A stretch of DNA of 64,000 nt, from positions 186,001-250,000 of IMG/VR virus record IMGVR_UViG_3300028558_000791. One strand, given 5' to 3'. Below, in pieces: positions 6,359 through 34,094 of the stretch. The notes below the pieces were generated by a model. That model saw only the letters and a program-made list of their open reading frames with translations, was not told the origin of the DNA and searched no databases. Within the stretch, counting starts at the first letter, position 1, and each line of letters starts with the position of its first letter. The position numbers were made by a program, and so were the translations under genes.

Positions 6359-6730
6359 ATGAAAGATCAGAATAGACGAAGTAAGAGGAACTACAAAAAG
6401 GCACCGAAGGGAGGTGAAACGCAGCCAGTCGTCGTCAACGACAAATTCGCACATATTGAAGCAGTGCAAGCCCAACCCCTCGAAGTTAAAGTGTATGGGA
6501 ACAATTTCGATAAAGCTCTTAGAGCTTTTCGAGCCTTAGTGCAGAAAGAAAGGGTTCTTTCGTCATATAAGGAAAAGCAGTCGTACGAGAAACCGTCCGA
6601 TAAACGTAGGAGAAAGCGCAACGAATCCGTAAGGAAACAACTTGAACTCTGTAGCAAAGGTGACTGTAGACATACAGAACACGCCAAGAATCGCAAAGAG
6701 CGCAAGTTTAAGCGTAACTCCTCAGAATAA
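6359..6730 (+). CDS. rpsU: Ribosomal protein bS21 with N- and C-terminal extensions
   Basis: EVKVYGNNFDKALRAFRALVQKERVLSSYKEKQSYEKPSDKRRRKRNES matches the bS21 pattern (V.V....F.KAL+.F+......G+L.......+Y.KPS.+R++K). Confidence 0.88.
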   Translation: MKDQNRRSKRNYKKAPKGGETQPVVVNDKFAHIEAVQAQPLEVKVYGNNFDKALRAFRALVQKERVLSSYKEKQSYEKPSDKRRRKRNESVRKQLELCSKGDCRHTEHAKNRKERKFKRNSSE

Positions 6731-6742
6731 TCTGGGAACAAC

Positions 6743-7459
6743 ATGTCTGATACCGATGGAAAAGTAAAACTTATCAAGAATCCTGAAAGAAGTAAACCTG
6801 CGTCATACAAACCGTATGTACCGCAATATCAGGTTCATGGTAAAGAACCCCAAGAGTATCAAGGTGGTGCAGTGGTGCCTGGTGCTACAATTGCCAGGCC
6901 CACTCAACTACCCTCTGATAATCCAAGGGCGAGAAGAGTGCCAGTGCGTCAGCCATATGCTGAACCTACCTCTTCTCCCATCGGTAGAGGACCCGTTCCA
7001 AATGTAGGTAATAATATGGAACATACGTGGTCTAGTGTAGATGGTGAGATTGTAGATGATTTGACTGGTGGGGAACTTGATCCTAACCAAGAGATGGTTG
7101 ATAATAATGACTATGTTAGTGAATCAGCTTTTGGATTCAGAAATGGACCAACTGCCGCTGACATTCGTCCTGAATATCAAGCTTTTCCGCCAAAGGCTAT
7201 TGAACAAGAAGTTCAAGCCAAGCATATTCCAGTTGATCCAGAAGACTTATTACCAGTATTAGCGGATTTAGAGGCTGATGCTTATCTTCTAATTGTAGCA
7301 GGAACTCCAGTTTGTTCTGGTCCCAAAGAAGAGATTGAAGACCAGGCTATGGCATTAGTATCTGGCGAACATGAGATGTGTGACGGAAATCCTGTCTCAG
7401 TCGATGATATAATTATTCTTAAGAGAGTCAAGGTAAAGATTGGTCTTTTCTTAGAATAA
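6743..7459 (+). CDS. Hypothetical Pro-rich protein
   Basis: 238 aa ORF in operon orientation. Confidence 0.75.
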   Translation: MSDTDGKVKLIKNPERSKPASYKPYVPQYQVHGKEPQEYQGGAVVPGATIARPTQLPSDNPRARRVPVRQPYAEPTSSPIGRGPVPNVGNNMEHTWSSVDGEIVDDLTGGELDPNQEMVDNNDYVSESAFGFRNGPTAADIRPEYQAFPPKAIEQEVQAKHIPVDPEDLLPVLADLEADAYLLIVAGTPVCSGPKEEIEDQAMALVSGEHEMCDGNPVSVDDIIILKRVKVKIGLFLE

Positions 7460-7466
7460 AGGTACC

Positions 7467-8354
7467 ATGGGACAAGAGCCAAGAAAAGCTACAGATGTAT
7501 TGTTAGATTTAGAATCTAAAGTAACAGAATTACTAGGAATAATTCGTGCTCAGGATTTGAATATTAAGGTATTATCCAATAAATTAAATGATGTAATTGG
7601 ACGATTGGATAAGCAACCAGCCGGCCCACCAAAGATTGTAGTGGAGACAGTACAAGCGCCCCCAAGGGCAAATATTGTTCCATCGACATTCGACCAAATT
7701 CCGGCTGGTGATCCGACAAGGAACATTCCAGTAACGGCTGAATCTAAGCTTCCACAAGCTGGAGCACCACAAGGTTTCCGACGTTCTTCTAGACCGGAAA
7801 CTTATGCTGGTGACAATGCATACCTCCCTCGTCCTGAGCAAGAGATGAAGATGCCTGTCCAGCTTCCTAAGATGCCTCCAGCACGTCAAGACCCTAATGG
7901 GCCCCCTCCAGGTCGCGGGCCTTCTGATGCAGATGCTATGGTGCCACAAGAGGCAATGGAGAATCCAAGAAATAATAAGAGGGGCGTAATGGCTCCTCCT
8001 AATCCACGAGGAGCGCCAGTTGCACAACAACCACAAGCGCCGCCAATGGATGAAGAACATCAACAGCAAGCTGCACATGGACAAATTCCAGTTATGCAGC
8101 GATGTGTGGATAAGAATGGCAAATCCCTTTTCTTAGCGCCCGTTGAAATCGTTGACCTGTCAACCGGACAATCAGTTTTCAAAACAAGAACAAATGGAAC
8201 TGGTAAATGGATGGCGTCCCTTGGTATAGGAGGTTATCGAGTAACGATCACTAAGCAAGCTTCTATGAACAAGGAGAAGCTTGAAGCGGTACAAGACATT
8301 CAAGTGGACGGCACCCAATCGCCACTCGAATTACCGATGATGATCATCAAGTAA
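7467..8354 (+). CDS. Hypothetical protein: N-terminal coiled coil, Pro/Gln-rich linker, C-terminal carboxypeptidase-regulatory/prealbumin-like beta domain
   Basis: C-terminus VDKNGKSLFLAPVEIVD...TRTNGTGKW...GGYRVTITK fits a CnaB/CarboxypepD_reg-like sandwich. Confidence 0.6.
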   Translation: MGQEPRKATDVLLDLESKVTELLGIIRAQDLNIKVLSNKLNDVIGRLDKQPAGPPKIVVETVQAPPRANIVPSTFDQIPAGDPTRNIPVTAESKLPQAGAPQGFRRSSRPETYAGDNAYLPRPEQEMKMPVQLPKMPPARQDPNGPPPGRGPSDADAMVPQEAMENPRNNKRGVMAPPNPRGAPVAQQPQAPPMDEEHQQQAAHGQIPVMQRCVDKNGKSLFLAPVEIVDLSTGQSVFKTRTNGTGKWMASLGIGGYRVTITKQASMNKEKLEAVQDIQVDGTQSPLELPMMIIK

Positions 8355-8367
8355 TTGCGAGGCCCTA

Positions 8368-9066
8368 ATGGGTAAAAAGTATTCTGTAATTGTGGCTGAT
8401 CCGCCATGGCCGTTCAAGGATTCTCTTAAAATGTCCAATGTCAAGCGTGGCGCCCTGGCCAACTACGACACCATGACAATGCAACAAATTCGCGAGATGC
8501 CCGTAGCGGAGGCTTGCAATCCTGACGGAGCAGTCTTATGTTTATGGGTGCCGGGCTCTTTGCTACAAGACGGCCTCAACACCATGAAAGCTTGGGGCTT
8601 CGATCATAAGCAGACCTATGTATGGGTCAAAATCAAGAAGCATAGATTCAAGAGGTTTTCTGCTTGGATCAAAAAGAGTATATTGAAACATAAGCAAATA
8701 TCTTATGATAAGTTTGCTTATGATAGAGCCATCAAAGCAATTCTAGATTCATTGCCAAATGTTGATTTAGCAGATGAACTAGCTTTCTTTATGGGCCGCC
8801 TTTTTAGACAGACTCACGAAATTTGTTTGGTTGGAACTCGCGGTAAGATACTAAAGCAATTAGAAAACAAATCACAACGTTCTGTTAGTTTTGCTGAGAA
8901 CCTAAAACACTCAGCTAAACCAGAAGACCTACAAGACTCTTTGGAAGCTATGTTTCCAAAAGCTCGGAAACTAGAATTGTTCGCCAGGAGACTCCGCTCG
9001 GGTTGGACTTGTCTAGGTAACGAGATTGATGGTAAGGACATCTATGATGCTCTTGCCGAACTGTAA
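8368..9066 (+). CDS. MT-A70 family N6-adenine methyltransferase
   Basis: VIVADPPW, LCLWVP, WGFDHKQTYVWVK, THEICLVG, HSAKP, KLELFARR...GWTCLGNE. Confidence 0.92.
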   Translation: MGKKYSVIVADPPWPFKDSLKMSNVKRGALANYDTMTMQQIREMPVAEACNPDGAVLCLWVPGSLLQDGLNTMKAWGFDHKQTYVWVKIKKHRFKRFSAWIKKSILKHKQISYDKFAYDRAIKAILDSLPNVDLADELAFFMGRLFRQTHEICLVGTRGKILKQLENKSQRSVSFAENLKHSAKPEDLQDSLEAMFPKARKLELFARRLRSGWTCLGNEIDGKDIYDALAEL

Positions 9067-9083
9067 CGGAGAATAGAAACATC

Positions 9084-9593
9084 ATGTCGAAGAAAACGCT
9101 TTTGTTAAATGCCAGTTATGAGGTGCTTTCTTTCATCCCAGAAAGAAAAGTATTCAAGTTGCTTTTCAAGGATAAGGTTGAAGTTGTCTCATCTTGGGAC
9201 GAGTTCATCACCTGGGGTTCCGGAAAGGTTGCACACCCTTCTATCTTGAGATTGAAGAATCACGTAAAGAGAAATTACTTCAACTCAAACTTTAGTCGTA
9301 AGGCTTTGGTAAAAAGAGATAGAAGCACTTGTCAGTATTGTGGTAGGAAGCTTACCGCTTCTCAGGTTACTGTTGACCACGTTTTACCAAGAGCACAAGG
9401 AGGTATTACCTCTTTCGTGAACTGTGTGGTCTCGTGTCAGGTTTGTAATAACCAAAAGGCTGATAAGACGCCGGAACAAGCAAACATGAAGCTTTTGAAG
9501 AAGCCAACTCATCCGTCTTTTTCTGCGACATACTATGTGGCGGATCCCCAGGAATACTGGCATAAAGATTGGGATGACTTCTTACAGGGCTAA
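9084..9593 (+). CDS. HNH endonuclease
   Basis: TLLLNASYE N-terminus, RDRSTCQYCG, TVDHVLPRAQGG, NCVVSCQVCNNQK. Confidence 0.92.
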   Translation: MSKKTLLLNASYEVLSFIPERKVFKLLFKDKVEVVSSWDEFITWGSGKVAHPSILRLKNHVKRNYFNSNFSRKALVKRDRSTCQYCGRKLTASQVTVDHVLPRAQGGITSFVNCVVSCQVCNNQKADKTPEQANMKLLKKPTHPSFSATYYVADPQEYWHKDWDDFLQG

Positions 9594-9609
9594 AACCTGA
9601 TTTGTCTGG

Positions 9610-9640
9610 AGGGGATAATAGAAACATTATCCCCTTTTTC
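9610..9640 (+). terminator. Rho-independent terminator
   Basis: Perfect 10-bp stem aggggataat/attatcccct, 6-nt loop, then a T tract. Confidence 0.85.
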
Positions 9641-9675
9641 AGGGCAATAATATGGAATACCTATATACTTTCCCA

Positions 9676-9683
9676 TGATATAT
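9676..9683 (+). promoter_or_regulatory. TGATATAT promoter-like box
   Basis: Recurrent 8-mer at gene boundaries; here just after a terminator and 10 nt before ATG 9694. Confidence 0.6.
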
Positions 9684-9693
9684 AGGAAGCACC

Positions 9694-9954
9694 ATGACCC
9701 AGGTAACATCTTGTAACTGCATTGTTTGTGCGCAAGAGTTCGATTCAGAAGAACTCCAGAGCGTAGCGTTGTCTAAAATCAATGTAACTCGTTTCAAGAT
9801 TTGTCAGTCATGCCTTGATCATTGTGATCCAGCCGAAGACTATCGTGAAGTCCGTGAAATCATTAGTTCTTATCTTTGGTTTGCTGAGGCTAAGGGTCTA
9901 TTCAAGGAAGCTTCTGACATTTTGGATGATGTCAATTCCAAGAAGAAATCATAA
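9694..9954 (+). CDS. Small zinc-finger hypothetical protein
   Basis: CIVC and CQSC pairs; SD AGGAAG. Confidence 0.7.
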   Translation: MTQVTSCNCIVCAQEFDSEELQSVALSKINVTRFKICQSCLDHCDPAEDYREVREIISSYLWFAEAKGLFKEASDILDDVNSKKKS

Positions 9955-10101
9955 TTCTATTACGACGACTCGTGGAGTTTCTTCTTCATCGTTTGATTTC
10001 TTGCGCTCAATAGGAGGCGCCTCAAGCTCGATGTAAAGAGGTTGTAACTCTTCTTTTTTCTTTTTCTCGATTTTGTGGATAAAAGGAAAGAAATCGTTCA
10101 T
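9949..10101 (-). CDS. Small hypothetical protein, 50 aa; start refined to ATG 10101
   Basis: GGAGG SD upstream on the minus strand; MNDFFPFIHKIEKKKKEELQPLYIEL...RVVVIEL. Confidence 0.6.
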   Translation of the reverse strand: MNDFFPFIHKIEKKKKEELQPLYIELEAPPIERKKSNDEEETPRVVVIEL

Positions 10102-10139
10102 AGTCGCCTCCAATAGGGATATGCTGGAATAATGGTAAG

Positions 10140-10337
10140 ATGATGTGTTCAAATTGTTCCAAGCTAGCCTTCTTATACACTAAGAAGCAATGTATGCGCT
10201 GTCAAGGCACGGTTGTTGTCAACGTGGCCGTAATCTGTGAACTTTGTTCAACTAACGATAAGATTTGCTCCGTATGTTTGAAAAAACTTACGCCATTGCA
10301 ACCTAAGAGTGGTGGTTGCAACTGTGGTAAAAAGTGA
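10140..10337 (+). CDS. Cys-rich small protein (10 Cys in 65 aa)
   Basis: Four CxxC pairs plus C-terminal CNC. Confidence 0.7.
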   Translation: MMCSNCSKLAFLYTKKQCMRCQGTVVVNVAVICELCSTNDKICSVCLKKLTPLQPKSGGCNCGKK

Positions 10338-10367
10338 TTAGGATCCCTCGGGGTATATAGGTAAGAC

Positions 10368-10895
10368 ATGATAATCACAAATAATGAGGCCGCGCTACGT
10401 GTGTTCTGTGAACCCGTAACGATGGAAGAAGTAGGTTCTTTAATTGATACTCTCGAAAAAGAGCTAGACTATGCTAACCGTTTGGGTAAAAACGGAATTG
10501 GATTAGCAGCACCCCAAATAGGTATTGCTAAAGATATTGCTATTATACGTTTACCCAAGATTAGTTTAAATCTAATTAATGCAAGATTAACTCAAGGATT
10601 TGATCCTGCCACGTTTACAGATGAAGGTTGTTTATCTTTCCCTGGTCGTACAGAAAATACTACAAGATTCCAGGAAGTGTATATTACCAACAATCTAGTT
10701 GAGCCTCATAGTTTTGTAGCTAGCGGTTTTATCTCAGTAGTATGCCAACACGAGTTGGATCATTTGAGCTCTACTCTGTTTATGGATCGTAGCCTTCCTA
10801 AGCCGGTGCCGGTTATTAGGAAAGCCAAAGTTGGCCCTAATGAAACATGTATTTGTGGTTCGGGTAAGAAATACAAGAAGTGTTGTGGTCGCTGA
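10368..10895 (+). CDS. def: Peptide deformylase with C-terminal SEC-C zinc motif
   Basis: GIGLAAPQIG, EGCLSFP, QHELDHL; tail VGPNETCICGSGKKYKKCC is a SEC-C motif. Confidence 0.95.
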   Translation: MIITNNEAALRVFCEPVTMEEVGSLIDTLEKELDYANRLGKNGIGLAAPQIGIAKDIAIIRLPKISLNLINARLTQGFDPATFTDEGCLSFPGRTENTTRFQEVYITNNLVEPHSFVASGFISVVCQHELDHLSSTLFMDRSLPKPVPVIRKAKVGPNETCICGSGKKYKKCCGR

Positions 10896-10937
10896 ATCTC
10901 TAGCGATAACTGTTATAGAAAGATATGGGAGATTCTA

Positions 10938-11195
10938 ATGACTGACAAAAAAGATGCTAAGAACGAGCTAACTAATGATGTATTGATGGCAGATATTATG
11001 CTGCGCGTAACTGCCATTGAAAAGCTTCTAATTGAGAAGGGTGTATTTACCCAAACAGAACTAACTGCAGCTACTGAGGAAATAGCCAAAAGAGTGGCTA
11101 AGGTAGTTTTAGAGAAAGTTCAAGGCTCAAAGAATATAGAAGAGTTTGTGGCTGATTTAGAAGCTTCTTCTAAGAAAAAGGATTTTGATAACTAA
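10938..11195 (+). CDS. Small helical hypothetical protein
   Basis: 85 aa, SD GGAG. Confidence 0.7.
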   Translation: MTDKKDAKNELTNDVLMADIMLRVTAIEKLLIEKGVFTQTELTAATEEIAKRVAKVVLEKVQGSKNIEEFVADLEASSKKKDFDN

Positions 11196-11503
11196 TGCAG
11201 TTCATTACTCAAGAAGAGGAACTTCAAATTGACCTGCCATTGCAGGCTTTGTATTTTTACGCTTCCTGGATGCCCTATCATAATAAATTCATTACTATGA
11301 TAGGTAAGATTGAGGAGAAGTATAAGGATATTTCTTTTTTTGCAGTAGATGTAGACGCTTTTCCAAGTCAGTGTAAAAGGTTTTCTGTAAATTCAGTACC
11401 TGAAGTTATAATCCTAAAGGATGGGAAAGAAATAAAACGAATCAGCGGGCTGGTCTTAACCAGCGCTTTTAGAAGCGCTTTTGCTGATATATGTAGTTCT
11501 TGA
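11195..11503 (+). CDS. Thioredoxin-fold protein lacking CxxC
   Basis: LYFYASWMPYH at the WCxxC position, FAVDVD, SVPEVIILKDGKEIKRISG. Confidence 0.8.
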   Translation: MQFITQEEELQIDLPLQALYFYASWMPYHNKFITMIGKIEEKYKDISFFAVDVDAFPSQCKRFSVNSVPEVIILKDGKEIKRISGLVLTSAFRSAFADICSS

Positions 11504-11523
11504 AACTATTAAACGGAGTTTAT

Positions 11524-11856: not shown

Positions 11857-11866
11857 TTGAGGTTGT

Positions 11867-12388: not shown

Positions 12389-12395
12389 CTTGCCT

Positions 12396-16499: not shown

Positions 16500-16508
16500 G
16501 GGAGTTAG

Positions 16509-17497: not shown

Positions 17498-17498
17498 A

Positions 17499-19355: not shown

Positions 19356-19364
19356 GAGGAAACA

Positions 19365-20612
19365 ATGCAAATTGATGTAACTGAATTAGAACCATGCAGA
19401 TTGGCCATTCATTATGAAGCTAACTTCCTAGAGATTTCTGACAAGAGAGCAGAAGTTGAAGTAGCTTTCAAGAAGGCACCCGTTCCAGGCTTTAGGCCAG
19501 GAAAGGCTACGTCAGAAGTTATTAGAGTGCACTATCGTCAGCAGATTGACGACTCTCTAAAGCGAGCATTGGCTGAAGATGCTTTTCACAATACGCTTTT
19601 CGAAAAGAAACTAAGACCACACGGCGCCCCTCGTTTCAATAACTTACTGCTTGATGGTGGTAAGTTTACTTGTGAGTTTGAGCTTTTGACCAAGCCAAGT
19701 TTTGAGCTTCCAGATTGGAAGAATTTGGAAGTTCCCAAGCCACATGGTGAGGCAGATTCTAATGAACTAGCTCAGAAGATGATGCAGGACTTGCGCGTCC
19801 GTCTTGGTGATGTAACCCCATACACTGACACTGACTTTGTCCAAACTGGTGATAATGTCATTATCGATTACGAAGGTACTATCGATGGTGAGAAGGTTGA
19901 TAGCCTAGTTGCTCAGGGAGAAATGGTTACCATTGGTAGTAGCCCTCTAGCAGCTTTCGATAGCAATCTTTTGGGAATGTCTATGGGCGAGACTCGTGAG
20001 TTTGACTTCGTTGCACCGGAGAATGGTTTACCATCTCTATCTGGTAAGACTATCCACTTCACAGTTACTTTGAACATGGGCTCTAAGACTACGCCTGCCG
20101 CGTTGGATGATGAGATGGCTAAGAAGATGGGCAAAGCAAACTTTGCTGAGTTGGAGGAAATGGTGGCACAAGCCGCATTTGCCCGCTCTGCTAATATGAA
20201 CAAGATGGCCATTCATGAGGCTATCGCCAAGAAGTTGGTTGTTGAAACACAGGTTGCAGTTCCACGCTGGATGTCTCTATCCGAGGCTCAGTATCTAACT
20301 CAGCAGTCTCAGTTAGATTGGAATGTGTTGCCAGATTCTGACAAAGAGAAGATGATTGAAATGGCTGAGCAGAACGTAAAGCTATCTTTGGTCTTAGATA
20401 AGATTAGAGAGGCTGAACCAGAAGCTCAACTAACTGATCAGGAAGTCTTTGAGATTATTAAACAGAACCTAGCTCAAACTAAGGTTACTCAAAGTTTAGA
20501 TGAAGTTATTCAGCAAATGAATAAGACGGGTTATCTACAGATTCTGTTCTCTCGTATTAGAGATGAGAATACTATGGATTACGTAGTGAAGACAGTAAAG
20601 TTGATTGATTAA
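19365..20612 (+). CDS. tig: Trigger factor (ribosome-associated chaperone/PPIase)
   Basis: Ribosome-binding signature VPGFRPGKA, FKBP-like GDNVIIDYEGTIDGE...LLGMSMGETREF, SurA-like C-terminus. Confidence 0.92.
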   Translation: MQIDVTELEPCRLAIHYEANFLEISDKRAEVEVAFKKAPVPGFRPGKATSEVIRVHYRQQIDDSLKRALAEDAFHNTLFEKKLRPHGAPRFNNLLLDGGKFTCEFELLTKPSFELPDWKNLEVPKPHGEADSNELAQKMMQDLRVRLGDVTPYTDTDFVQTGDNVIIDYEGTIDGEKVDSLVAQGEMVTIGSSPLAAFDSNLLGMSMGETREFDFVAPENGLPSLSGKTIHFTVTLNMGSKTTPAALDDEMAKKMGKANFAELEEMVAQAAFARSANMNKMAIHEAIAKKLVVETQVAVPRWMSLSEAQYLTQQSQLDWNVLPDSDKEKMIEMAEQNVKLSLVLDKIREAEPEAQLTDQEVFEIIKQNLAQTKVTQSLDEVIQQMNKTGYLQILFSRIRDENTMDYVVKTVKLID

Positions 20613-20951: not shown

Positions 20952-21229
20952 TGAAAGTCGAGAGATTTCTCATACAAGCATGCTGTAACAAGACCCAGAT
21001 TGTCTTTAAACTAGACAAGCCTCTGGATCAAAGCATACTTGAAATTCTGAAAAGTAACGGGTTCACAGAAGCTCCACACTTTACTAAAGCCGGAATGCTA
21101 TATGCCGATAGTTCGGAATTAATAGTAACGGGTCCGTTTGGTGGGGATAAGCTTAATGCCAAGTGCAAAAAGCAAGACTGTAGCCAAACCCTCAATGATC
21201 TTGAGGCGTTACTTATCAGAATGGGGTGA
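20951..21229 (+). CDS. Hypothetical protein
   Basis: 92 aa, TAATG coupling. Confidence 0.7.
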   Translation: MKVERFLIQACCNKTQIVFKLDKPLDQSILEILKSNGFTEAPHFTKAGMLYADSSELIVTGPFGGDKLNAKCKKQDCSQTLNDLEALLIRMG

Positions 21230-21897
21230 CAATGGCAAATGGGTCAGGATCTATCGCTGAAATCAGAAAGAAAGTTACCAAAACCCATGAATTTATCTCT
21301 ACTTCATATCATGAAGCTGGACATACAATTTTTGCTCTTTTACACCTAATGAGAGTTAGTTCTGTATCGGTATTCGAAGATAAAAAATTGAAAAGGGTTC
21401 ATGGTAACACTTACTATGAATATCCTAGTGATTTGGACGAAGTCCAGGACCAAGACCTTCTAAATACTTTAGTTAAGGCCGAAGTTGGGATTAGTTACGC
21501 TGGTTTGATTGCTGAAAAGTCTTTGTTTAGAAGCATTTCTGGTTCTAAACAAACCCCAACGTTTATTAGCGATGGGTCAGCATCTGACAACAAGTCAGCC
21601 CGTGAGGTGATTAAAAAGTACAACCTAGCACCTCCTGGGCCTAAAAGAACTGCTTATAAAGCAAAGATTATGAGAGAAGTTCAACAGGAACTTCATGATA
21701 ATTGGGATGCTGTAATGGTCGTGTCTCACGCCCTATTCCGTCATCGTCGTTTGTCATTTGAAGATTTACAAGAATTGCTTACCAAAAAGACCCATAATAA
21801 AAAGTTTTGGAAAGACCAATTCAAAAAGATTAGCCATTTTTACGACAATAGCAAGGCCCTTGACGAAAAAGATCTAAAGATTATTTTATCAAGGTAA
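21226..21897 (+). CDS. Stand-alone peptidase M41 (FtsH protease-domain)-like protein
   Basis: SYHEAGHT (HExxH), YAGLIAE, GSASDNKSA corresponding to FtsH GASND. Confidence 0.75.
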   Translation: MTMANGSGSIAEIRKKVTKTHEFISTSYHEAGHTIFALLHLMRVSSVSVFEDKKLKRVHGNTYYEYPSDLDEVQDQDLLNTLVKAEVGISYAGLIAEKSLFRSISGSKQTPTFISDGSASDNKSAREVIKKYNLAPPGPKRTAYKAKIMREVQQELHDNWDAVMVVSHALFRHRRLSFEDLQELLTKKTHNKKFWKDQFKKISHFYDNSKALDEKDLKIILSR

Positions 21898-25534: not shown

Positions 25535-25542
25535 TATATAAG

Positions 25543-25614
25543 ATACAGACGATATTGGATAATAACAAAATCGACGCATCAACCGAAAAATGATACGAAT
25601 GATATCGTCTGTAT
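25543..25614. repeat. Perfect 13-bp inverted repeat with 46-nt spacer
   Basis: atacagacgatat (25543-25555) / atatcgtctgtat (25602-25614). Confidence 0.9.
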
Positions 25615-25636
25615 ATGCATAATAAGGAAAGTAGTC

Positions 25637-26530: not shown

Positions 26531-26532
26531 TC

Positions 26533-28983: not shown

Positions 28984-28986
28984 GTC

Positions 28987-29289: not shown

Positions 29290-29342
29290 TCATTTGTCGA
29301 GAAAAAGTTCGTTCAATTCAATATTACAGGAGAAAGACAAAC

Positions 29343-29849: not shown

Positions 29850-29860
29850 TGGGAGATAAA

Positions 29861-31069
29861 ATGTCAGATGATAAGAAAAAGAAGTCAGATAGGCTAACCG
29901 CGTTTTTCCGAAGTTTTGCCGATGCAGACGAACAATTAGACTTTAGACTCGCCCACGAAACCATGGGAGAGAAGCTCCCCGTGACTTCCTCTGGTTCATT
30001 AGTTCTCGATGACGCTTTGTCATCTGGAGGACTTCCTAAGGGCAGATTAATTCAGTTCTATGGTGCTCCTGGTAGCGGTAAGACCTTGATGGCCATGCTA
30101 GCAATGAAAGAAGCTCAGCAAGCTGAGCCGGGCACTCAACAAATGTTCATTGACGCTGAAGGGACATTTGATGCTAAGTGGGCTGAAATTTTGGGATTGG
30201 ATGTTTCTCGTATCATTGTCGTTGATGGTGAGACTGCCGTTATTGGCCGTAGCTGTTTCGAAATGATCCTTGGCGTTCCTAAGGAAGACAAGAAGACTCA
30301 CTTGCTCGTCGGTAAGACCAAGCAAGGTTTGCTCGATATGATTATGGCAGGCGAGTTTAATATCAACATGGTTGTATTGGATTCACTTGGCGCTATTATT
30401 CCACCAGGCGAAGATGTTTCGGCTGTTGGAAAGATGAACATGGCTTTGTTAGCTAGATTCTTAACCACTACTTTCCGTAAGCTTTCTCTAGATGCAAATA
30501 GGGCTAATGTGCCATTCATTTTCATCAACCACAAGAAGGCTAATATGGATCCTTATGGTGTGGACCATTCATTCTCCGGCGGAAATACTTACGCTCACTT
30601 CTTGAGTGCCAACGTTTACTTTGAAGCAGTGGCACGTGCAGACGCACAAATCTTGGATGAAAAAGAGCAAAAGGTCGGTCATACAATGCGTGCCACCATT
30701 GAAAAGTCGAAGTTCGGCCCTTACCCACGTAAGTGCGAATTCAAAGTGAACTTCGGCATCGGTATCATTGATAAGCACGAAGAGGTCGCACAGCTAGCCT
30801 TGGACTACAACGTAGTCGTCAAGACCTCCACAGTGTCCCATGAATATGGCGACAAGAAGTGGGTTGGATTTCCAAAGTTCTGTGAAGCCGTCAAAGATGA
30901 TCCAGCCTTAGCGGCTGAGTTGACTCAGAAGATTGGTGAAGCTCGTGATTACAAGAGAGATGCCGCCAGAAGAGAACAAGAAGCAAAGAAAGAAGCTGCT
31001 TTGGCTCCAGCAGTAGCAGATGATGCTAGTGTTGAAATAGATACGAAGAAGAGTAAGAAAGGTAAGTAA
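29861..31069 (+). CDS. recA: RecA recombinase
   Basis: SGSLVLDDALSSGGLPKGR, GAPGSGKT, FIDAEG, VVLDSLGA, FINH, SGGN, KSKFGPYP; SD GGAG before ATG 29861. Confidence 0.95.
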   Translation: MSDDKKKKSDRLTAFFRSFADADEQLDFRLAHETMGEKLPVTSSGSLVLDDALSSGGLPKGRLIQFYGAPGSGKTLMAMLAMKEAQQAEPGTQQMFIDAEGTFDAKWAEILGLDVSRIIVVDGETAVIGRSCFEMILGVPKEDKKTHLLVGKTKQGLLDMIMAGEFNINMVVLDSLGAIIPPGEDVSAVGKMNMALLARFLTTTFRKLSLDANRANVPFIFINHKKANMDPYGVDHSFSGGNTYAHFLSANVYFEAVARADAQILDEKEQKVGHTMRATIEKSKFGPYPRKCEFKVNFGIGIIDKHEEVAQLALDYNVVVKTSTVSHEYGDKKWVGFPKFCEAVKDDPALAAELTQKIGEARDYKRDAARREQEAKKEAALAPAVADDASVEIDTKKSKKGK

Positions 31070-31072
31070 ACC

Positions 31073-31423
31073 ATGCCAATTGATTTAGGCCCAAACAGTC
31101 TAACGATGGCCATTGCGCCATCTCTTAAGAAACCTCCATTCATGATTGTATTGGATGGCGGTCTTCAAGGGAAGACTCGTATTTTCGAGAGATTTATTTC
31201 TTTGGATAAGCCTCTATCAGAAAATGGTTTTATCACAGTTAAAGGAATTTTCTGTGATAAGGACGAAGACGAAATAATCAAAGGTTTTGCGGACATCTTG
31301 ACGAATACCTCGAAAGAACTTATATTGGAGATGATGTTTCCGCTACACAGAGTTTACAGCATTAGAAGTTTAGTCTTCAATGCAGTAAAGACTATAAACA
31401 ATCCAAATAAGGAAAGTAAGTAA
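31073..31423 (+). CDS. Hypothetical protein
   Basis: 116 aa, in operon. Confidence 0.7.
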   Translation: MPIDLGPNSLTMAIAPSLKKPPFMIVLDGGLQGKTRIFERFISLDKPLSENGFITVKGIFCDKDEDEIIKGFADILTNTSKELILEMMFPLHRVYSIRSLVFNAVKTINNPNKESK

Positions 31424-31704
31424 TGCGAGAAGACATAGAGGTGAATGAGTTAGTATTCACCAAGATCAACACGATAGTAAGTAACCAATCTGGTAGCAAG
31501 TGGATCGGAACGATGACCAATTTGATGACTGCTTTGAACAGAGTTTCTAGCAAGCGTCAAAGAGAGATTCTACCCGGCTCTCCAGGTGCTCTCAGAGTGG
31601 TGATAAACAGAGTAGCCAACAGGCTACGTAACAGGGGTATCGGAGTAAGATTCAGCCGAACCACTGACCACGCACGAACTCGTAACGTACGATTTACACA
31701 CTGA
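31423..31704 (+). CDS. Small basic protein, probable winged-helix DNA-binding domain
   Basis: WIGTMTNLMTAL...LPGSPGALRVVINRVANRLRNRGIGVRF resembles winged-helix domains at the C-terminus of phage/plasmid primase-helicases. Confidence 0.55.
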   Translation: MREDIEVNELVFTKINTIVSNQSGSKWIGTMTNLMTALNRVSSKRQREILPGSPGALRVVINRVANRLRNRGIGVRFSRTTDHARTRNVRFTH

Positions 31705-31790
31705 TGTGATAGATAATACGATCGATGGTTTTGTTAAGTAGATAAAAGTACTAGAAACAGTACATAGAGAAATAACAGTAGGAGATCAAT

Positions 31791-32525
31791 ATGACGAATA
31801 CATTTGGTGAAGTAGACTGGAACTCAGACGTTTTCCCAGGCGACAACAAGAAACAAACAAACAGCAAAGACCTCTTTCTTCGTTTAGATGAGGGTCCAAA
31901 CGAGATCAGACTCCTGACCCAGCCACACCAGTACTTGGTTCACAAGTATAAGAAAGACGGTGACACAGGCTTTGGACAGAAGGTTCAGTGCTCCGCAATT
32001 CACGGAAGCTGCCCACTCTGTGCCACTGGCGATAAGGCCAAGCCACGTTGGTTGCTCGGCGTAATTAGCCGTAAGACTAACACTTACAAGATTCTTGATA
32101 TCTCTTTCGCTGTGTTCTCGCAGATCAGAAAGTACAACAAGAATGCGCGATTTGGTGATCCTACCAAGTACGACATCAACGTTGAAGTTGATAAGAACGG
32201 CGGAGCTACTGGATACTACAGTGTACAAGCCCTACCAAAAGAGCCACTATCGGCTGCTGACCAAGTAATTAAGGACAGCATTGATTTTGATGACCTGAAG
32301 CGCAGAGTCACTCCACCAACTCCTGACAAAGTTCAGGGTCGTTTGGACAAGATTAATGGTGTAACGACCACCGGTGCAACTACTTCCGCACCAGCTACGG
32401 CACCTGCCGCCGCTGCTGCTAAGAAGACTGTAACCAAGGCTGCCGCTCCAGCCGTCAGCATGACTGATGATGAAGACTTGGATAAGTCATTTCCGGACTA
32501 CGAAGGTGACCCAGCTCAATCCTAA
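31791..32525 (+). CDS. Single-stranded DNA-binding protein (T4 gp32-like)
   Basis: FLRLDEGPNEIRLL, zinc site CSAIHGSCPLC, PRWLLGVI, DPTKYDINV, Ala/Thr linker, acidic tail; SD AGGAG; followed by a terminator. Confidence 0.8.
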   Translation: MTNTFGEVDWNSDVFPGDNKKQTNSKDLFLRLDEGPNEIRLLTQPHQYLVHKYKKDGDTGFGQKVQCSAIHGSCPLCATGDKAKPRWLLGVISRKTNTYKILDISFAVFSQIRKYNKNARFGDPTKYDINVEVDKNGGATGYYSVQALPKEPLSAADQVIKDSIDFDDLKRRVTPPTPDKVQGRLDKINGVTTTGATTSAPATAPAAAAAKKTVTKAAAPAVSMTDDEDLDKSFPDYEGDPAQS

Positions 32526-32550
32526 ATCTATCACTCCCTAGATAGTACTG

Positions 32551-32588
32551 AAAAGCCTGCAACTTAACTGTTGTGGGCTTTTCTTTTT
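32551..32588 (+). terminator. Rho-independent terminator
   Basis: 13-bp stem aaaagcctgcaac/gttgtgggctttt (2 G-U pairs), loop ttaact, T tract. Confidence 0.85.
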
Positions 32589-32592
32589 CAAT

Positions 32593-32600
32593 TGATATAT
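32593..32600 (+). promoter_or_regulatory. TGATATAT promoter-like box, probably giving a leaderless transcript
   Basis: 7 nt before ATG 32608, no SD, directly after a terminator. Confidence 0.65.
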
Positions 32601-32607
32601 TACAAGT

Positions 32608-33168
32608 ATGGCAAAAACTATACTTGGCTTCGACGCCTCTTCGACTACTATTGGATATTGTGTATTAAGTTGGGATGAAACTACTAATGACATTTCCTTT
32701 GTCAAAGCAGGATATATCAAACCTAAGAAGACTGGAACTATTATTGAAAGAATAGTAGATACTAGAAATCAGGTTCAGAAAGTAATTGTAGATGCCCAAC
32801 CAGACTATATTGGAATTGAGGAAATTATTCAGTTCATGAAAGGTAAAAGCACGGCTAAGACTATTATCATGCTAACTACATTCAACAGAATGGTATGTTT
32901 GACCTCTTACGATTATCTGGGTAAATCTCCAACACTCTATAGTGTAATGACTATTCGTCATGGATTGAAGTTCGGCAAAGAATTACCAAAAAAAGAAGAA
33001 ATGCCGGCCCTTGTCGCCCAACATTTAGGAATTACATTTCCTTACGAGTATAATAAAAAGGGCAACATCAAGGTCGAAAGTTTTGACAAAGCTGACGGCA
33101 TCGCCGTTGCCCTTTATCATGCCCGAGTATTATCGGGTAAGGTGAAGCCCAAGGGTAAGAAGAAATGA
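32608..33168 (+). CDS. ruvC: RuvC-like Holliday junction resolvase
   Basis: TILGFDASSTTIGY, IGIEE, DKADGIAVA (D, E, D, D catalytic pattern). Confidence 0.85.
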   Translation: MAKTILGFDASSTTIGYCVLSWDETTNDISFVKAGYIKPKKTGTIIERIVDTRNQVQKVIVDAQPDYIGIEEIIQFMKGKSTAKTIIMLTTFNRMVCLTSYDYLGKSPTLYSVMTIRHGLKFGKELPKKEEMPALVAQHLGITFPYEYNKKGNIKVESFDKADGIAVALYHARVLSGKVKPKGKKK

Positions 33169-34094
33169 ATCTTAAGGAAGCCTACACAACTCTAGAATTG
33201 GCCCAGGGCTCGTCCCCGGAGGAAGCCAAGAAGAAGTACCGAGAACTTACTAAAAAGTATCACCCCGATATAAATAAGGACCCCGATGCCGAGGGTAAGT
33301 TCAAGAAAATCAATGAAGCCTACCAAATCATACAAACTGGTAAGGGGACTGATCTACAAGATAGGCATCCACAACAAGGCGGTTTTCATAGACAGCAGCA
33401 GGTAATTCAATTAGAGAACGTTGAAGTTCATCTAACCATCTCATTCAAAGAATCTGTTCTTGGATGTAAGAAAGAAATCAAATACGCTCGTCAAAGCAAA
33501 TGCCAAGACTGTAATGGAGCTGGAGACATCAAGCTCAACAACGGTTGTAAGAAGTGTGGCGGTAAAGGTCAAATTGTTAATCGACAAGGTAACATGGTTA
33601 TGGTTACAACATGTAATGAATGTTATGGGCGGGCCAATGTAGCTGAATGTTCAGCTTGTCATGGCCATGGGACCGTACAGGCAGACGTGTCTGTGCACGT
33701 GTCTGTGCCTGCGGGAATTATGAATAACAATACTCTTCGTCTACAAGGCATGGGTAATTACGCAGGTTCATTCCTGGGAGTGGCTGACCAACATACTGAC
33801 GCTTTCTGTCATGTTACTGTAACACAAGAGCCGGGCCTTAATATAGAGGGACCGCATGTCATTAGTCATCTAACGCTTCCTTTGTTAGACGCTTTGCGTG
33901 GTTGTAAGCGTAAGGTAAAGACGATTCATGGAGACAAAGAGATTCAAGTCAAACCGCAGTCTAGAAACCGTGATGAGGTAATTATACCCCATTGTGGTGT
34001 CAGCGGTACTGGAGACCAAAAAGTAGTTCTAGACGTTGAATATCCTAAGAACACTGACAAATTGATTGGCGTTCTGTTAGATGAGGTAATATAA
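33165..34094 (+). CDS. dnaJ: DnaJ chaperone (J domain, four CxxCxGxG-type repeats, C-terminal domain)
   Basis: KKYHPDIN, FKKINEAY, CQDCNGAG, CKKCGGKG, CNECYGRA, CSACHGHG, LRLQGMG. Confidence 0.95.
   Translation: MNLKEAYTTLELAQGSSPEEAKKKYRELTKKYHPDINKDPDAEGKFKKINEAYQIIQTGKGTDLQDRHPQQGGFHRQQQVIQLENVEVHLTISFKESVLGCKKEIKYARQSKCQDCNGAGDIKLNNGCKKCGGKGQIVNRQGNMVMVTTCNECYGRANVAECSACHGHGTVQADVSVHVSVPAGIMNNNTLRLQGMGNYAGSFLGVADQHTDAFCHVTVTQEPGLNIEGPHVISHLTLPLLDALRGCKRKVKTIHGDKEIQVKPQSRNRDEVIIPHCGVSGTGDQKVVLDVEYPKNTDKLIGVLLDEVI

What the first reader, a model, noticed from the sequence alone, without database searches (positions are those of the whole stretch)
6359..34094. Ribosome and nascent-chain toolkit: bS21, PDF-SEC-C, trigger factor and DnaJ in one phage
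Peptide deformylase and trigger factor both act at the ribosomal tunnel exit (established), bS21 acts in initiation and DnaJ folds downstream. All four within 28 kb of a phage suggests a pathway that captures ribosomes and processes phage nascent chains. It may serve the very large, low-complexity head proteins encoded to the right.
Basis: partly seen in the sequence, partly recalled or inferred. Interest (0 to 1): 0.65.

Follow-up and report, generated by a model that had tools for sequence, protein, structure and literature searches.

The report
Huge-phage ribosome and nascent-chain gene set
A 481-kb soil phage and its whole lineage carry their own ribosomal protein bS21, a peptide deformylase fused to a SecA-type zinc tail, a trigger factor and a DnaJ, so these phages probably supply their own protein-maturation factors; the four genes are inherited together but are not one gene cluster.

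Summary
All four genes are real, intact and at the stated coordinates: bS21 (6359-6730), PDF with a C-terminal SEC-C/SecA-type metal-binding tail (10368-10895), trigger factor (19365-20612) and DnaJ (33165-34094). The window lies in a 480,838-bp virus record from rhizosphere metagenomes.

In 13 of 14 large related contigs, and in all three complete genomes, the four genes occur in the same order and spacing. They diverge like neighbouring replication genes, have dN/dS of about 0.04-0.14 and normal GC. The trigger factor belongs to a phage-only family. Members down to 27% identity still sit between a PD-(D/E)XK nuclease and DNA polymerase III alpha.

The genes are not a cluster. They are scattered among about 35 replication and recombination genes in at least three transcription units, and DnaJ is coupled to RuvC and a primase.

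The genome adds a type I methionine aminopeptidase, an EF-G-sized GTPase, 57 tRNAs, a tmRNA and an AAA-less FtsH-type protease domain. It lacks DnaK, GrpE, GroEL and SmpB.

bS21, PDF and tRNA sets are known in huge phages. The conserved phage trigger factor and the virus-associated PDF-MBD fusion appear undescribed. Function is inferred, and no RNA data exist.

The parts
6359..6730 (+). Phage bS21 (123 aa). The S21 core is at residues 42-94, with a basic N-terminal extension and a C-terminal extension.
   Evidence: PF01165 scores 55.8 bits and the TIGR00030 equivalog 53.3 against 28.95. It is present in 13 of 14 relatives. The core is invariant and the KKAxxGG extension is conserved. dN/dS is 0.10-0.14.
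10368..10895 (+). Peptide deformylase (type 1B-like catalytic domain, residues 1 to about 146) fused through a Pro-rich linker to a SecA-type metal-binding domain.
   Evidence: PF01327 scores 83.7 bits and PF02810 35.9 bits. All three catalytic motifs are intact and invariant. Alignment to solved PDFs stops at about residue 146, which corresponds to residues 150-154 of 168-171-aa bacterial enzymes. It is present in 13 of 14 relatives. The fusion is kept in nearly all of the top 120 homologues.
10839..10892 (+). SEC-C / SecA-like metal-binding domain (MBD), CICGSGKKYKKCCGR. It is the only SEC-C motif in the 481-kb genome.
   Evidence: The tail aligns end to end with the E. coli SecA MBD peptide 1sx0 (16 of 22 identical), with the SecA peptide of the SecB complex 1ozb, and with the YchJ C-terminus 9l6b. 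A genome-wide search finds a single hit.
19365..20612 (+). Trigger factor (415 aa) with an N-terminal ribosome-binding domain carrying GFRPGK, an FKBP-like domain and a C-terminal arm domain.
   Evidence: Pfam finds all three domains and the TIGR00115 equivalog scores 200.7 against 180.2. It is present in 13 of 14 relatives. G42, F43, R44 and G46 are invariant. The phage-type family is one side of a branch with SH-aLRT 100. The same synteny holds at 27-34% identity.
33165..34094 (+). DnaJ-like co-chaperone (309 aa) with a J domain carrying HPD, a very short G/F linker, a four-motif zinc finger and C-terminal domains. Its start overlaps the RuvC stop and its stop overlaps the next gene's start.
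   Evidence: PF00226 scores 60.8 bits, PF01556 79 bits and PF00684 32.4 bits, the last just under its cut-off. TIGR02349 scores 191 against 377, so it is not an equivalog. HPD and the cysteines are invariant. It is present in 13 of 14 relatives.
32608..35224 (+). Tightly coupled unit of RuvC (32608-33168), DnaJ, a zinc-ribbon protein (34094-34459) and a Toprim/DnaG-type primase domain protein (34460-35224).
   Evidence: The overlapping or abutting start and stop codons can be read from the coordinates. The order is conserved in relatives.
32550..32583 (+). Intrinsic-terminator-like hairpin with a 14-bp stem followed by a U tract. It is followed by a TGATATAT promoter-like motif and sits just upstream of RuvC-DnaJ.
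   Evidence: Found in the scan. The fold has a free energy of -21.3 kcal/mol and z = -6.2. The motif was found.
9611..9637 (+). Intrinsic-terminator-like hairpin followed by a U tract and a TGATATAT motif. It separates the AAA-bS21...HNH unit from the unit that contains PDF.
   Evidence: The fold has a free energy of -17.3 kcal/mol and z = -3.25. The gap sequence is shown.
21226..21897 (+). FtsH-type (M41) zinc protease domain without an AAA module. It lies two small ORFs downstream of trigger factor and may be a degradation arm of the set.
   Evidence: The sequence hits are weak (PF01434 E = 0.008; TIGR01241 E = 0.0013). HEAGH, E97 and D121 are invariant in 11 genomes. The AlphaFold2 model has pLDDT 88.5. 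The top 50 Foldseek PDB hits are almost all FtsH, AFG3L2 or YME1 protease domains, the best at E = 4.6e-5.
5025..6338 (+). Classic-clade AAA+ ATPase (437 aa) immediately upstream of bS21 in every relative. It could partner the AAA-less protease domain, but this is speculative.
   Evidence: PF00004 scores 72 bits. The nearest NCBIfam families are the proteasome-activating nucleotidase, CDC48 and FtsH, all far below their cut-offs. It is conserved at 71-92% identity.

Best explanation
The four genes belong to the vertically inherited core genome of a large lineage of huge phages of about 430-510 kb found in soil and rhizosphere samples. Together with genes elsewhere in the genome they give the phage its own factors for translation initiation and co-translational maturation. 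Those other genes are a type I methionine aminopeptidase, an EF-G-sized GTPase, 57 tRNAs, a tmRNA and a CCA-adding-type nucleotidyltransferase.

Proposed mechanism, all of it inferred from what is known of the families. Phage bS21, with its basic N-terminal extension, enters host 30S subunits and biases initiation. PDF removes the N-formyl group. Its usual C-terminal ribosome-docking helix is replaced by a SecA-type metal-binding domain. That module tethers SecA and AscA/YecA to 70S ribosomes near uL23 and to SecB, so it would hold PDF at the tunnel exit. Map then removes the methionine. Trigger factor docks on uL23 through its GFRxGK loop and shields nascent chains. DnaJ passes clients to host DnaK, because the phage has no DnaK or GrpE.

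The genes are not a dedicated operon. They sit in at least three transcription units inside the replication and recombination module, so they are probably expressed with the replication genes. The likely benefit is to keep nascent-chain processing capacity up while a genome of about 550 genes is expressed and host protein synthesis declines.
For: Shown:
- Identities and intact motifs.
- Presence in 13 of 14 related contigs and all three genomes that are at least 97% complete, with the same order and spacing.
- Collinearity of the whole 30-kb block, with divergence like that of the neighbours.
- dN/dS of 0.04-0.14, similar to PolIII alpha and RecA.
- GC and GC3 within two standard deviations of the window's genes.
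- Motif invariance across 11 genomes.
- Map present here and in all complete relatives.
- Genome-wide set: 57 tRNAs plus a tmRNA, an EF-G-sized GTPase, and no HSP70, Cpn60, GrpE or SmpB.
- Trigger factor is a phage-specific family. 160 clusters at 50% identity reach E <= 1e-30. Five of five informative members at 27-34% identity lie in the PDDEXK-TF-PolIII alpha context. The family is one clade with SH-aLRT 100.
- A sister phage with 50% TerL identity has the same order S21-PDF-TF-TerL.
- The PDF catalytic domain ends where the bacterial C-terminal helix would begin, and the tail is 16 of 22 identical to the E. coli SecA MBD.

From the literature:
- The SecA C-terminal tail cross-links to uL23 (PMC6620043).
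- The MBD binds SecB and ribosomes, and AscA/YecA binds 70S ribosomes only when its MBD is present (bioRxiv 10.1101/613315 and 10.1101/2020.07.21.215244).
- Huge phages are already proposed to redirect translation with S21, PDF, tRNAs and tmRNA (PMC7162821).
Against: No expression or biochemical data exist. Only DNA runs hold this sequence.

The genes are interspersed with DNA-metabolism genes and separated by terminator-like hairpins, so nothing in the layout ties them into one pathway.

PDF and DnaJ fall below the NCBIfam equivalog cut-offs. DnaJ lacks a normal G/F region.

The trigger factor signature lacks the final proline. In more distant phage lineages the phenylalanine is replaced: GFRxG is present in 85 of 122 representatives.

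The host is unknown, so compatibility with its ribosome, DnaK or SecB cannot be judged.

The MBD docking idea rests only on analogy.
Confidence: 0.6

Rival explanations
1. The genes have separate jobs and do not form a pathway. Each is kept for its own reason, and some act on DNA transactions rather than nascent chains. DnaJ, with host DnaK, would remodel replication or recombination complexes, as host DnaJ/DnaK do for lambda O-P-DnaB and P1 RepA. Trigger factor would serve a specific client such as the 1182-aa PolIII alpha encoded next to it, or virion assembly.
For: DnaJ's start overlaps the RuvC stop. Its stop overlaps a zinc-ribbon gene, which abuts a Toprim primase-domain gene. All of this lies behind a strong terminator. 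The PDDEXK-TF-PolIII alpha adjacency survives down to 27% trigger factor identity. The lambda and P1 precedents come from established knowledge, not from a tool.
Against: The whole block is collinear, so conserved adjacency may be only inherited gene order. The trigger factor keeps all three domains and its ribosome-binding loop. The genome also carries Map, PDF and bS21, which have no role in DNA transactions.
Confidence: 0.22
2. The set antagonises the host rather than supplementing it. Phage trigger factor and the MBD-tagged PDF would occupy the uL23/uL29 exit site, and possibly SecB. This would exclude host SRP, SecA or trigger factor and shut down host membrane and secretory protein biogenesis. 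bS21 would redirect initiation away from host mRNAs.
For: The MBD is the module that SecA and AscA use to bind ribosomes and SecB. Trigger factor, SRP and SecA share the uL23 site (SecA at uL23; trigger factor and SRP from established knowledge). The nearest PDF+SEC-C clusters in the ESM Atlas are about 95% viral.
Against: The PDF catalytic motifs are invariant and under strong purifying selection (dN/dS 0.04-0.06), which a mere blocker would not need. A catalytically complete Map is also kept. There is no direct evidence of competition.
Confidence: 0.1
3. The genes are an artefact or recent pickups: host DNA in a provirus-flagged or chimeric contig, or recently acquired auxiliary genes from unrelated hosts.
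For: IMG/VR classes the record's ends as 'provirus'. Nearly all trigger factor hits in deposited phage records are bacterial contamination, for example a tig-clpP context in a so-called Acinetobacter phage.
Against: The genes lie at 192-220 kb of a 481-kb record, between phage replication genes and the terminase. The synteny is the same in 13 related contigs, including a 452-kb genome with direct terminal repeats. GC is native. The trigger factor scores only 14-78 bits against bacterial trigger factors but at least 138 bits against phage-type ones.
Confidence: 0.02

Closest known systems
Translation-redirecting gene sets of huge phages (Al-Shayeb et al. 2020, PMC7162821; ribosomal proteins in viruses, Mizuno et al. 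2019)
   Same: bS21 with a basic N-terminal extension, PDF, large tRNA sets, a tmRNA and a CCA-adding enzyme in phages over 200 kb, interpreted as interception of host translation.
   Different: That paper's main text does not mention trigger factor, DnaJ or Map. Here the set extends to the tunnel exit with PDF-MBD, Map and trigger factor, and it is a fixed, collinear core of a whole lineage rather than a scattered occurrence. The lineage has no close relative among deposited phage genomes: the best TerL hit is 27% identical.
Phage peptide deformylases: cyanophage S-SSM7 PDF (3uwa, PMC3660681) and Vibrio phage Vp16 PDF (5mtc)
   Same: A type 1B-like catalytic core without the bacterial C-terminal helix. 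Both solved phage enzymes are hit by sequence.
   Different: Those enzymes simply end after the core (154 and 137 aa). This one adds a Pro-rich linker and a SecA-type MBD. None of the 12 best of the 149 deposited phage records with a PDF match aligns past query residue 152.
SecA-like MBD proteins: SecA C-terminal tail, AscA/YecA, YchJ
   Same: The C-terminal CxCxSx6C[CH] zinc or iron module, 16 of 22 residues identical to the E. coli SecA MBD. In SecA and AscA it mediates binding to SecB and the ribosome.
   Different: The attached domain is a nascent-chain processing enzyme, not a translocation ATPase or a holdase. The nearest clusters with this architecture are about 95% viral. No paper in the library pairs deformylase with SEC-C in this sense.
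Bacterial trigger factor (tig, TIGR00115)
   Same: Three-domain architecture, passes the equivalog cut-off, and keeps the GFRxGK ribosome-binding loop.
   Different: It is shorter (415 aa) and forms a separate clade from the sampled bacterial trigger factors. Identity to bacterial trigger factor genes present as contaminants in phage records is at most about 30%. It sits between a PD-(D/E)XK nuclease and PolIII alpha instead of next to clpP-clpX. The last proline of the signature is missing.
Phage-encoded or phage-exploited chaperones: DnaJ homologues in Lak and other huge phages and in marine RCA and HMO-2011-type phages; from general knowledge, T4 gp31, phage EL GroEL, and lambda's use of host DnaJ/DnaK
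   Same: A phage carries a co-chaperone that must work with a host partner. HPD is intact and there is no phage DnaK.
   Different: Identity to those phage DnaJs is only about 25%. The G/F region is nearly absent. The gene is translationally coupled to RuvC and a primase domain.

Membership tests
Ribosomal protein bS21 | S21 domain above the curated cut-offs | tested here: met
   PF01165 scores 55.8 against 27. The TIGR00030 equivalog scores 53.3 against 28.95.
Ribosomal protein bS21 | Incorporation into the 30S subunit | not testable with these tools
   This needs ribosome purification from infected cells.
Peptide deformylase (type 1B) | Three catalytic motifs: G[IVL]GLAAxQ, EGC[LI]S and QHExDH | tested here: met
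   GIGLAAPQ, EGCLS and QHELDH are present and invariant in 11 to 19 sequences.
Peptide deformylase (type 1B) | Score above the equivalog cut-off | tested here: not met
   TIGR00079 scores 88.1 against 103.95. The Pfam cut-off is met, 83.7 against 22.8.
Peptide deformylase (type 1B) | C-terminal alpha-helix that docks the enzyme on the ribosome | tested here: not met
   Alignment to solved PDFs ends at query residue about 146, which corresponds to residues 150-154 of 168-171 aa. What follows is PKPVPVIRKAKVGPNE and then the MBD. The AlphaFold2 model was too poor to add anything.
SecA-like metal-binding domain (SEC-C) | CxCxSx6C[CH] motif at the extreme C-terminus | tested here: met
   PF02810 scores 35.9 against 20.4. 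The tail is 16 of 22 identical to SecA MBD 1sx0. Both the CC and CH variants occur among homologues.
SecA-like metal-binding domain (SEC-C) | Binding to SecB and/or the 70S ribosome | tested here: inconclusive
   The complex prediction with the E. coli SecB tetramer returned no verdict. Ribosome binding is not testable here.
Trigger factor | N-terminal, PPIase and C-terminal domains, and the equivalog cut-off | tested here: met
   Trigger_N 70.2, FKBP_C 28.3 and Trigger_C 30.7 bits are all above their cut-offs. TIGR00115 scores 200.7 against 180.2.
Trigger factor | Ribosome-binding signature GFRxGxxP | tested here: inconclusive
   The sequence is GFRPGKAT. G, F, R and G are invariant in the clade but the final proline is absent. 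GFRxG is present in 85 of 122 wider phage-type representatives.
Class A (type I) DnaJ | J domain with HPD | tested here: met
   PF00226 scores 60.8 against 27.8. HPD is invariant.
Class A (type I) DnaJ | Gly/Phe-rich region after the J domain | tested here: not met
   The linker is only about 25 residues with a single GGF. The TIGR02349 alignment skips model positions of about 60-107.
Class A (type I) DnaJ | Four CxxCxGxG zinc motifs and the C-terminal domains, and the equivalog cut-off | tested here: inconclusive
   Three motifs are canonical and one is degenerate (CNECYGRA). PF00684 scores 32.4 against 32.7. DnaJ_C scores 79 against 26.6. TIGR02349 scores 191 against 377.2 and is not met.
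Type I methionine aminopeptidase (outside the window, genome 348995-349684) | Equivalog cut-off | tested here: met
   TIGR00500 scores 231.1 against 171.35. PF00557 scores 114.9 bits.
FtsH (M41) protease | HEXXH zinc site and the M41 fold | tested here: met
   HEAGH, E97 and D121 are invariant. The model has pLDDT 88.5 and the top Foldseek hits are FtsH, AFG3L2 and YME1.
FtsH (M41) protease | Fused AAA+ module, membrane anchor and family cut-offs | tested here: not met
   The protein is 223 aa with no AAA domain. PF01434 scores 16.5 against 29.9. TIGR01241 scores 17.6 against 600.
Dedicated operon or gene cluster ('toolkit locus') | Members adjacent or in one transcription unit | tested here: not met
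   The gaps between members are 3.6, 8.5 and 12.6 kb and are filled with DNA-metabolism genes. Terminator-like hairpins lie at 9611-9637 and 32550-32583.
Co-inherited functional gene set | Co-occurrence and conserved order across relatives | tested here: met
   Each gene is present in 13 of 14 relatives, and the one exception is a fragment that lacks the region. The block is collinear.

The most novel reading that the evidence does not exclude
This phage lineage refits the exit port of the host ribosome with its own factors. The first is a PDF that uses a SecA-type metal-binding domain, rather than the bacterial C-terminal helix, to dock near uL23, an architecture found so far mostly in viruses. 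The others are its own Map and an ancient phage-specific trigger factor family, working together with a phage bS21 on the small subunit. If so, phage-modified ribosomes with phage-specific co-translational processing would be a hallmark of a major group of soil huge phages. The MBD would then be a portable ribosome- and Sec-targeting tag that viruses have exploited.
Probability: 0.3. Interest if true: 0.8.

Novelty: new variant of a known kind. Interest (0 to 1): 0.6.

Why it matters
Huge phages are already thought to take over host translation at initiation and elongation. This lineage suggests the takeover reaches the next step: what happens to the chain as it leaves the ribosome, through deformylation, methionine removal, shielding by trigger factor and hand-over to DnaK.

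Three concrete, testable objects come out of it:
1. A PDF whose ribosome anchor has been exchanged for a SecA-type zinc module. This is a natural experiment on how exit-site factors are recruited.
2. A deep, phage-only trigger factor family of about 160 clusters at 50% identity. It can be expressed and tested on model ribosomes.
3. A fixed five-gene set (bS21, PDF-MBD, Map, trigger factor, DnaJ) that marks an abundant soil phage lineage with no cultured or deposited representative.

If these factors work as proposed, phage infection would be a setting in which the capacity for co-translational maturation limits fitness.

Tried and rejected
- AlphaFold2 model of PDF-MBD from a 19-sequence alignment: mean pLDDT was 44.8, so it was unusable. 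The claim about the C-terminus rests on sequence alignment to solved PDFs.
- Complex prediction of the PDF tail (residues 140-175) with an E. coli SecB tetramer and zinc: no verdict. It is not used as evidence either way.
- Expression: the look-up of sequencing runs found four rhizosphere DNA runs and no RNA run. Timing could not be tested and read laying was not used.
- Donor of the trigger factor: the genome-contig scan with a trigger factor alignment returned only a 383-kb contig binned in a Chitinophagales MAG. That contig is itself a sister huge phage, with a TerL 25 kb downstream and S21 and PDF upstream. A Bacteroidota donor is not supported. The window trigger factor scores 14-48 bits against 17 Bacteroidota trigger factors, against 66-78 bits for Staphylococcus and Acinetobacter. 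The donor remains unresolved. The tree left out every second phage representative, fragments under 380 aa, and bacterial loci with no ORF hit at E <= 1e-3.
- Deposited phage genomes: trigger factor hits are almost all bacterial contamination. bS21 gave no tblastn hit, probably because the query is short and of low complexity.
- The sigma-70 consensus scan was uninformative: 53 sites against 39.8 expected. Rfam found nothing in the window.
- Alternative genetic code: I considered this because ARAGORN calls tRNAs with CTA (two) and TTA (one) anticodons. I rejected it for this analysis. The standard code gives 92% coding and every gene used here is open under table 11. No other code was named.
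- Host contamination or a provirus flank: rejected.
- Literature: no paper in the held library describes a phage trigger factor or a PDF-SEC-C fusion. This absence applies to that library only.

Full report
**1. What is in the region**

All long ORFs in the window lie on the + strand.

Pfam scans confirm the four genes at the stated limits:

| Gene | Coordinates | Length |
|---|---|---|
| bS21 | 6359-6730 | 123 aa |
| Peptide deformylase with a C-terminal SEC-C motif | 10368-10895 | 175 aa |
| Trigger factor with all three domains | 19365-20612 | 415 aa |
| DnaJ (J domain, zinc finger, C-terminal domains) | 33165-34094 | 309 aa |

In the NCBIfam scan, bS21 and trigger factor pass their equivalog cut-offs. 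PDF and DnaJ do not.

Read directly from the translations:
- PDF has GIGLAAPQ, EGCLS and QHELDH, and ends in CICGSGKKYKKCCGR.
- Trigger factor has GFRPGKAT where bacterial enzymes have GFRxGxxP.
- DnaJ has HPD, four zinc motifs and almost no Gly/Phe region.
- bS21 has a basic N-terminal extension of about 41 residues, as reported for huge-phage S21 proteins (PMC7162821).

**2. What surrounds the genes**

The roughly 35 other genes between 5 kb and 36 kb are mostly for DNA metabolism:

| Gene | Start |
|---|---|
| Topoisomerase | 3193 |
| AAA+ ATPase | 5025 |
| MT-A70 methylase | 8368 |
| HNH endonuclease | 9084 |
| Thioredoxin-fold protein | 11195 |
| DnaG zinc ribbon | 12467 |
| Mre11/Rad50-like pair | 13081, 14274 |
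| dNMP kinase | 16509 |
| PD-(D/E)XK nuclease | 18570 |
| PolIII alpha | 21986 |
| RecA | 29846 |
| RuvC | 32608 |
| Toprim primase domain | 34460 |
| Sigma-like protein | 35299 |
| GIY-YIG endonuclease | 35770 |

To the right lie a CCA-adding-type nucleotidyltransferase (43198), the terminase large subunit (47412) and the portal (49376). There is also a 1242-aa repetitive protein whose N-terminus resembles a prohead protease (56566). This is phage DNA.

The window is bases 186001-250000 of a 480,838-bp IMG/VR virus record rated 100% complete. The sequence is held by rhizosphere metagenome runs.

**3. The four genes are not one locus**

- They are separated by 3.6, 8.5 and 12.6 kb of unrelated genes.
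- A terminator-like hairpin with a U tract lies at 9611-9637, between the AAA-bS21...HNH unit and the unit that holds PDF.
- A stronger hairpin lies at 32550-32583, just upstream of RuvC.
- Both hairpins are followed by a TGATATAT motif that recurs in four intergenic gaps.
- DnaJ's start overlaps the RuvC stop. Its stop overlaps a zinc-ribbon gene, which abuts the Toprim gene.

The layout therefore says "expressed with replication genes". It does not say "a nascent-chain operon".

**4.

The terminase has at least 80 relatives in IMG/VR at 65-94% identity. I searched 14 large related records.

| Gene | Records with it (of 14) |
|---|---|
| Trigger factor | 13 |
| PDF | 13 |
| bS21 | 13 |
| DnaJ | 13 |

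- The single exception is a 47%-complete fragment whose terminase lies 8 kb from the contig start, so the upstream block is missing.
- Order and spacing are the same in the three genomes rated 97-100% complete. These are 446, 433 and 452 kb, and the last has direct terminal repeats.
- A gene-by-gene comparison of the 30-kb block in 10 relatives shows complete collinearity.

| Gene | Identity to the window across 10 relatives |
|---|---|
| bS21 | 63-96% |
| PDF | 55-89% |
| Trigger factor | 57-86% |
| DnaJ | 48-82% |
| PolIII alpha (for comparison) | 72-93% |
| RecA (for comparison) | 71-93% |

- dN/dS against three relatives is 0.04-0.14 for the four genes, like the replication genes. dS is near saturation, so these values are approximate.
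- GC and GC3 are within two standard deviations of the window's genes.
- All functional motifs are invariant.

The distribution is not patchy and the genes are not recent arrivals.

**5. The trigger factor is an old, phage-specific family**

- The word search returned 1453 relatives. The top 120 are all at least 67% identical, on contigs up to 511 kb.
- The exhaustive search of representatives clustered at 50% identity found 160 clusters at E <= 1e-30. Identity runs continuously from 67% down to about 27%, and nearly all are 400-430 aa.
- I looked up the genomic context of six distant representatives. Five were informative (27-34% identity), and all five lie in the same phage context: a CHB_HEX-domain protein and/or the PD-(D/E)XK nuclease upstream, then trigger factor, then small ORFs, then PolIII alpha, often with inteins.
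- One of these also has DnaJ 9 kb downstream. The sixth contig was too short.
- The only hit in 185,579 species genomes was a 383-kb contig binned in a Chitinophagales MAG. That contig has a TerL at about 50% identity 25 kb downstream, and S21 and PDF upstream in the same order. It is a misbinned sister phage.
- In a tree of 63 phage-type and 20 bacterial trigger factors, the phage type is one side of a branch with SH-aLRT 100. The bacterial sample is narrow (17 Bacteroidota and 3 others), so the donor is unresolved.
- Bacteroidota trigger factors score lower against the window protein (14-48 bits) than Staphylococcus or Acinetobacter ones (66-78 bits).
- In deposited phage genomes, trigger factor hits are essentially bacterial contamination.

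**6. The PDF-MBD fusion**

- Against solved structures, the catalytic domain aligns to type 1B PDFs only up to residue about 146. That corresponds to residues 150-154 of 168-171-aa enzymes, which is where their C-terminal helix begins. The truncated phage PDFs 5mtc and 3uwa are also hit.
- In place of the helix there is a Pro-rich linker and a 22-residue tail. The tail is 16 of 22 identical to the E. coli SecA metal-binding domain (1sx0). It also aligns to the SecA peptide of the SecB complex (1ozb) and to the YchJ C-terminus.
- The fusion is kept in nearly all of the top 120 homologues, with CC or CH endings.
- It is the only SEC-C motif in the genome.
- The 12 nearest ESM Atlas clusters have the same two-domain make-up and are about 95% viral.
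- None of the 12 best of the 149 deposited phage records with a PDF match aligns past residue 152.
- Literature: the MBD binds SecB and ribosomes, and AscA/YecA co-sediments with 70S ribosomes only when its MBD is present (bioRxiv 10.1101/613315 and 10.1101/2020.07.21.215244). The SecA C-terminal tail cross-links to uL23 at the tunnel exit (PMC6620043).
- My inference, which is not shown: the MBD replaces the lost helix as the ribosome anchor of PDF, or links PDF to SecB.
- The phage has no SecB.
- The fold model was unusable and the SecB complex test gave no verdict.

**7. The wider set in the genome**

Present:
- A type I methionine aminopeptidase at genome 348995-349684. It passes its equivalog cut-off and is found in all complete relatives.
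- A 705-aa translational GTPase of EF-G size.
- 57 tRNAs and a tmRNA.

Absent from the genome: HSP70, GrpE, Cpn60 and SmpB. DnaJ must therefore use host DnaK.

Two small ORFs downstream of trigger factor lies a 223-aa protein at 21226-21897:
- HEAGH, E97 and D121 are invariant.
- The model is confident, with pLDDT 88.5.
- It matches almost only FtsH, AFG3L2 and YME1 protease domains.

It is an AAA-less FtsH-type protease domain. A classic AAA+ ATPase sits directly upstream of bS21 in every relative. Whether the two work together is speculation.

**8. Interpretation**

The best-supported reading is a co-inherited, selectively maintained set that lets the phage supply its own initiation and nascent-chain maturation factors. 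The factors are bS21, PDF-MBD, Map, trigger factor, and DnaJ working with host DnaK.

This extends the known huge-phage theme of redirecting translation (PMC7162821) to the ribosome exit site.

The step-by-step mechanism is inferred from family knowledge. Nothing here shows ribosome binding, expression or clients.

The main rival is that the genes have separate roles. In particular DnaJ could act in replication or recombination, given its coupling to RuvC and a primase domain. Trigger factor could have a specific client such as the PolIII alpha next to it. A competitive "block the host exit site" reading is possible but fits poorly with the strictly conserved catalytic residues. Contamination or recent transfer is excluded.

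**9. Novelty**

bS21, PDF, tRNA sets and tmRNA in huge phages are already published. DnaJ homologues occur in other phages.

Two features appear undescribed in the held literature, although pipelines already label the proteins:
- the phage-specific trigger factor family with fixed synteny;
- the largely viral PDF-MBD architecture.

I rate the finding a new variant of a known kind.

No non-standard genetic code was used.

Noticed in passing
window 21226-21897: A standalone FtsH-type (M41) protease domain with invariant HEAGH, no AAA module and no membrane anchor, two small ORFs downstream of trigger factor. The AlphaFold2 model has pLDDT 88.5 and matches almost only FtsH, AFG3L2 and YME1 protease domains.
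   Followed up: yes
window 5025-6338: A 437-aa protein with a classic AAA+ domain (nearest families are proteasome-activating nucleotidase, CDC48 and FtsH, all far below cut-off) and an unassigned N-terminal region of about 200 aa. It lies directly upstream of bS21 in all 10 compared relatives.
   Followed up: partly
window 11195-11503 and 10938-11195: The thioredoxin-fold protein has SWMPYH where the CxxC active site should be, so it is probably redox-inactive. The 85-aa ORF before it gives weak sub-threshold hits to nitrile hydratase alpha and beta N-terminal regions, which is leader-peptide-like. Both follow PDF directly and are conserved in relatives.
   Followed up: no
genome G000:C1 9-175 kb and 477 kb (outside the window): ARAGORN finds 57 tRNAs in clusters, including anticodons CTA (two) and TTA (one) that would read stop codons, plus a tmRNA at 170047-170403 with tag ANDNAFAMAA but no SmpB. 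TAG is a rare stop (30 of 578 ORFs). The standard code gives 92% coding, so there is no sign of recoding.
   Followed up: partly
genome G000:C1 67398-68252 (outside the window): A 705-aa ORF with a translational GTPase domain (GTP_EFTU, 205.6 bits) of EF-G size lies within the tRNA-rich region.
   Followed up: no
window 56566-60294: A 1242-aa protein with higher GC (0.47). Residues 105-213 resemble a head maturation protease. The rest is repetitive and of low complexity, rich in Ala, Gly, Asp, Lys and Glu, with a repeated unit of about 100 aa, suggesting a protease-scaffold fusion. It is the only large low-complexity head protein seen to the right of the region.
   Followed up: partly
L118-L120, L125 (G015:C75, record JAIXLO010000160.1): A 383-kb contig binned in a Chitinophagales MAG is a sister huge phage with the order S21, PDF, TF, TerL. 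Its TerL match is split in two within a 984-aa open frame, which suggests an intein-like insertion. PolIII alpha genes of more distant relatives also carry intein and LAGLIDADG hits.
   Followed up: partly
window 9594-9693, 32526-32607, 35225-35298, 49296-49375: The motif TGATATAT, like an extended -10 element, recurs in four intergenic gaps, twice directly after terminator-like hairpins. It may be the promoter type of this module. A long hairpin at 25543-25614 follows PolIII alpha.
   Followed up: partly
window 43198-43971: A 257-aa protein has only the head domain of CCA-adding or poly(A) polymerase enzymes (PF01743, 49.7 bits) and is far below the NCBIfam CCA-enzyme cut-offs. It may be a truncated tRNA nucleotidyltransferase serving the phage's tRNA set.
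   Followed up: no
window 2779-3192 and 46823-47411: Two unusually long gaps without a + strand ORF (414 and 589 bp) in an otherwise tightly packed window. The second lies directly upstream of the terminase. No Rfam family matches them.
   Followed up: no
window 6640-6700 (bS21 C-terminal extension): In the six closest genomes, including the window, the bS21 C-terminal extension carries CSKG[DE]CxHxxH, a possible small metal-binding knuckle. More distant relatives lack it.
   Followed up: no
G009, G012, G013 (relatives): Some relatives carry a second J-domain protein elsewhere in the genome, for example 188 aa at G013:141072 and 343 aa at G009:194680.
   Followed up: no
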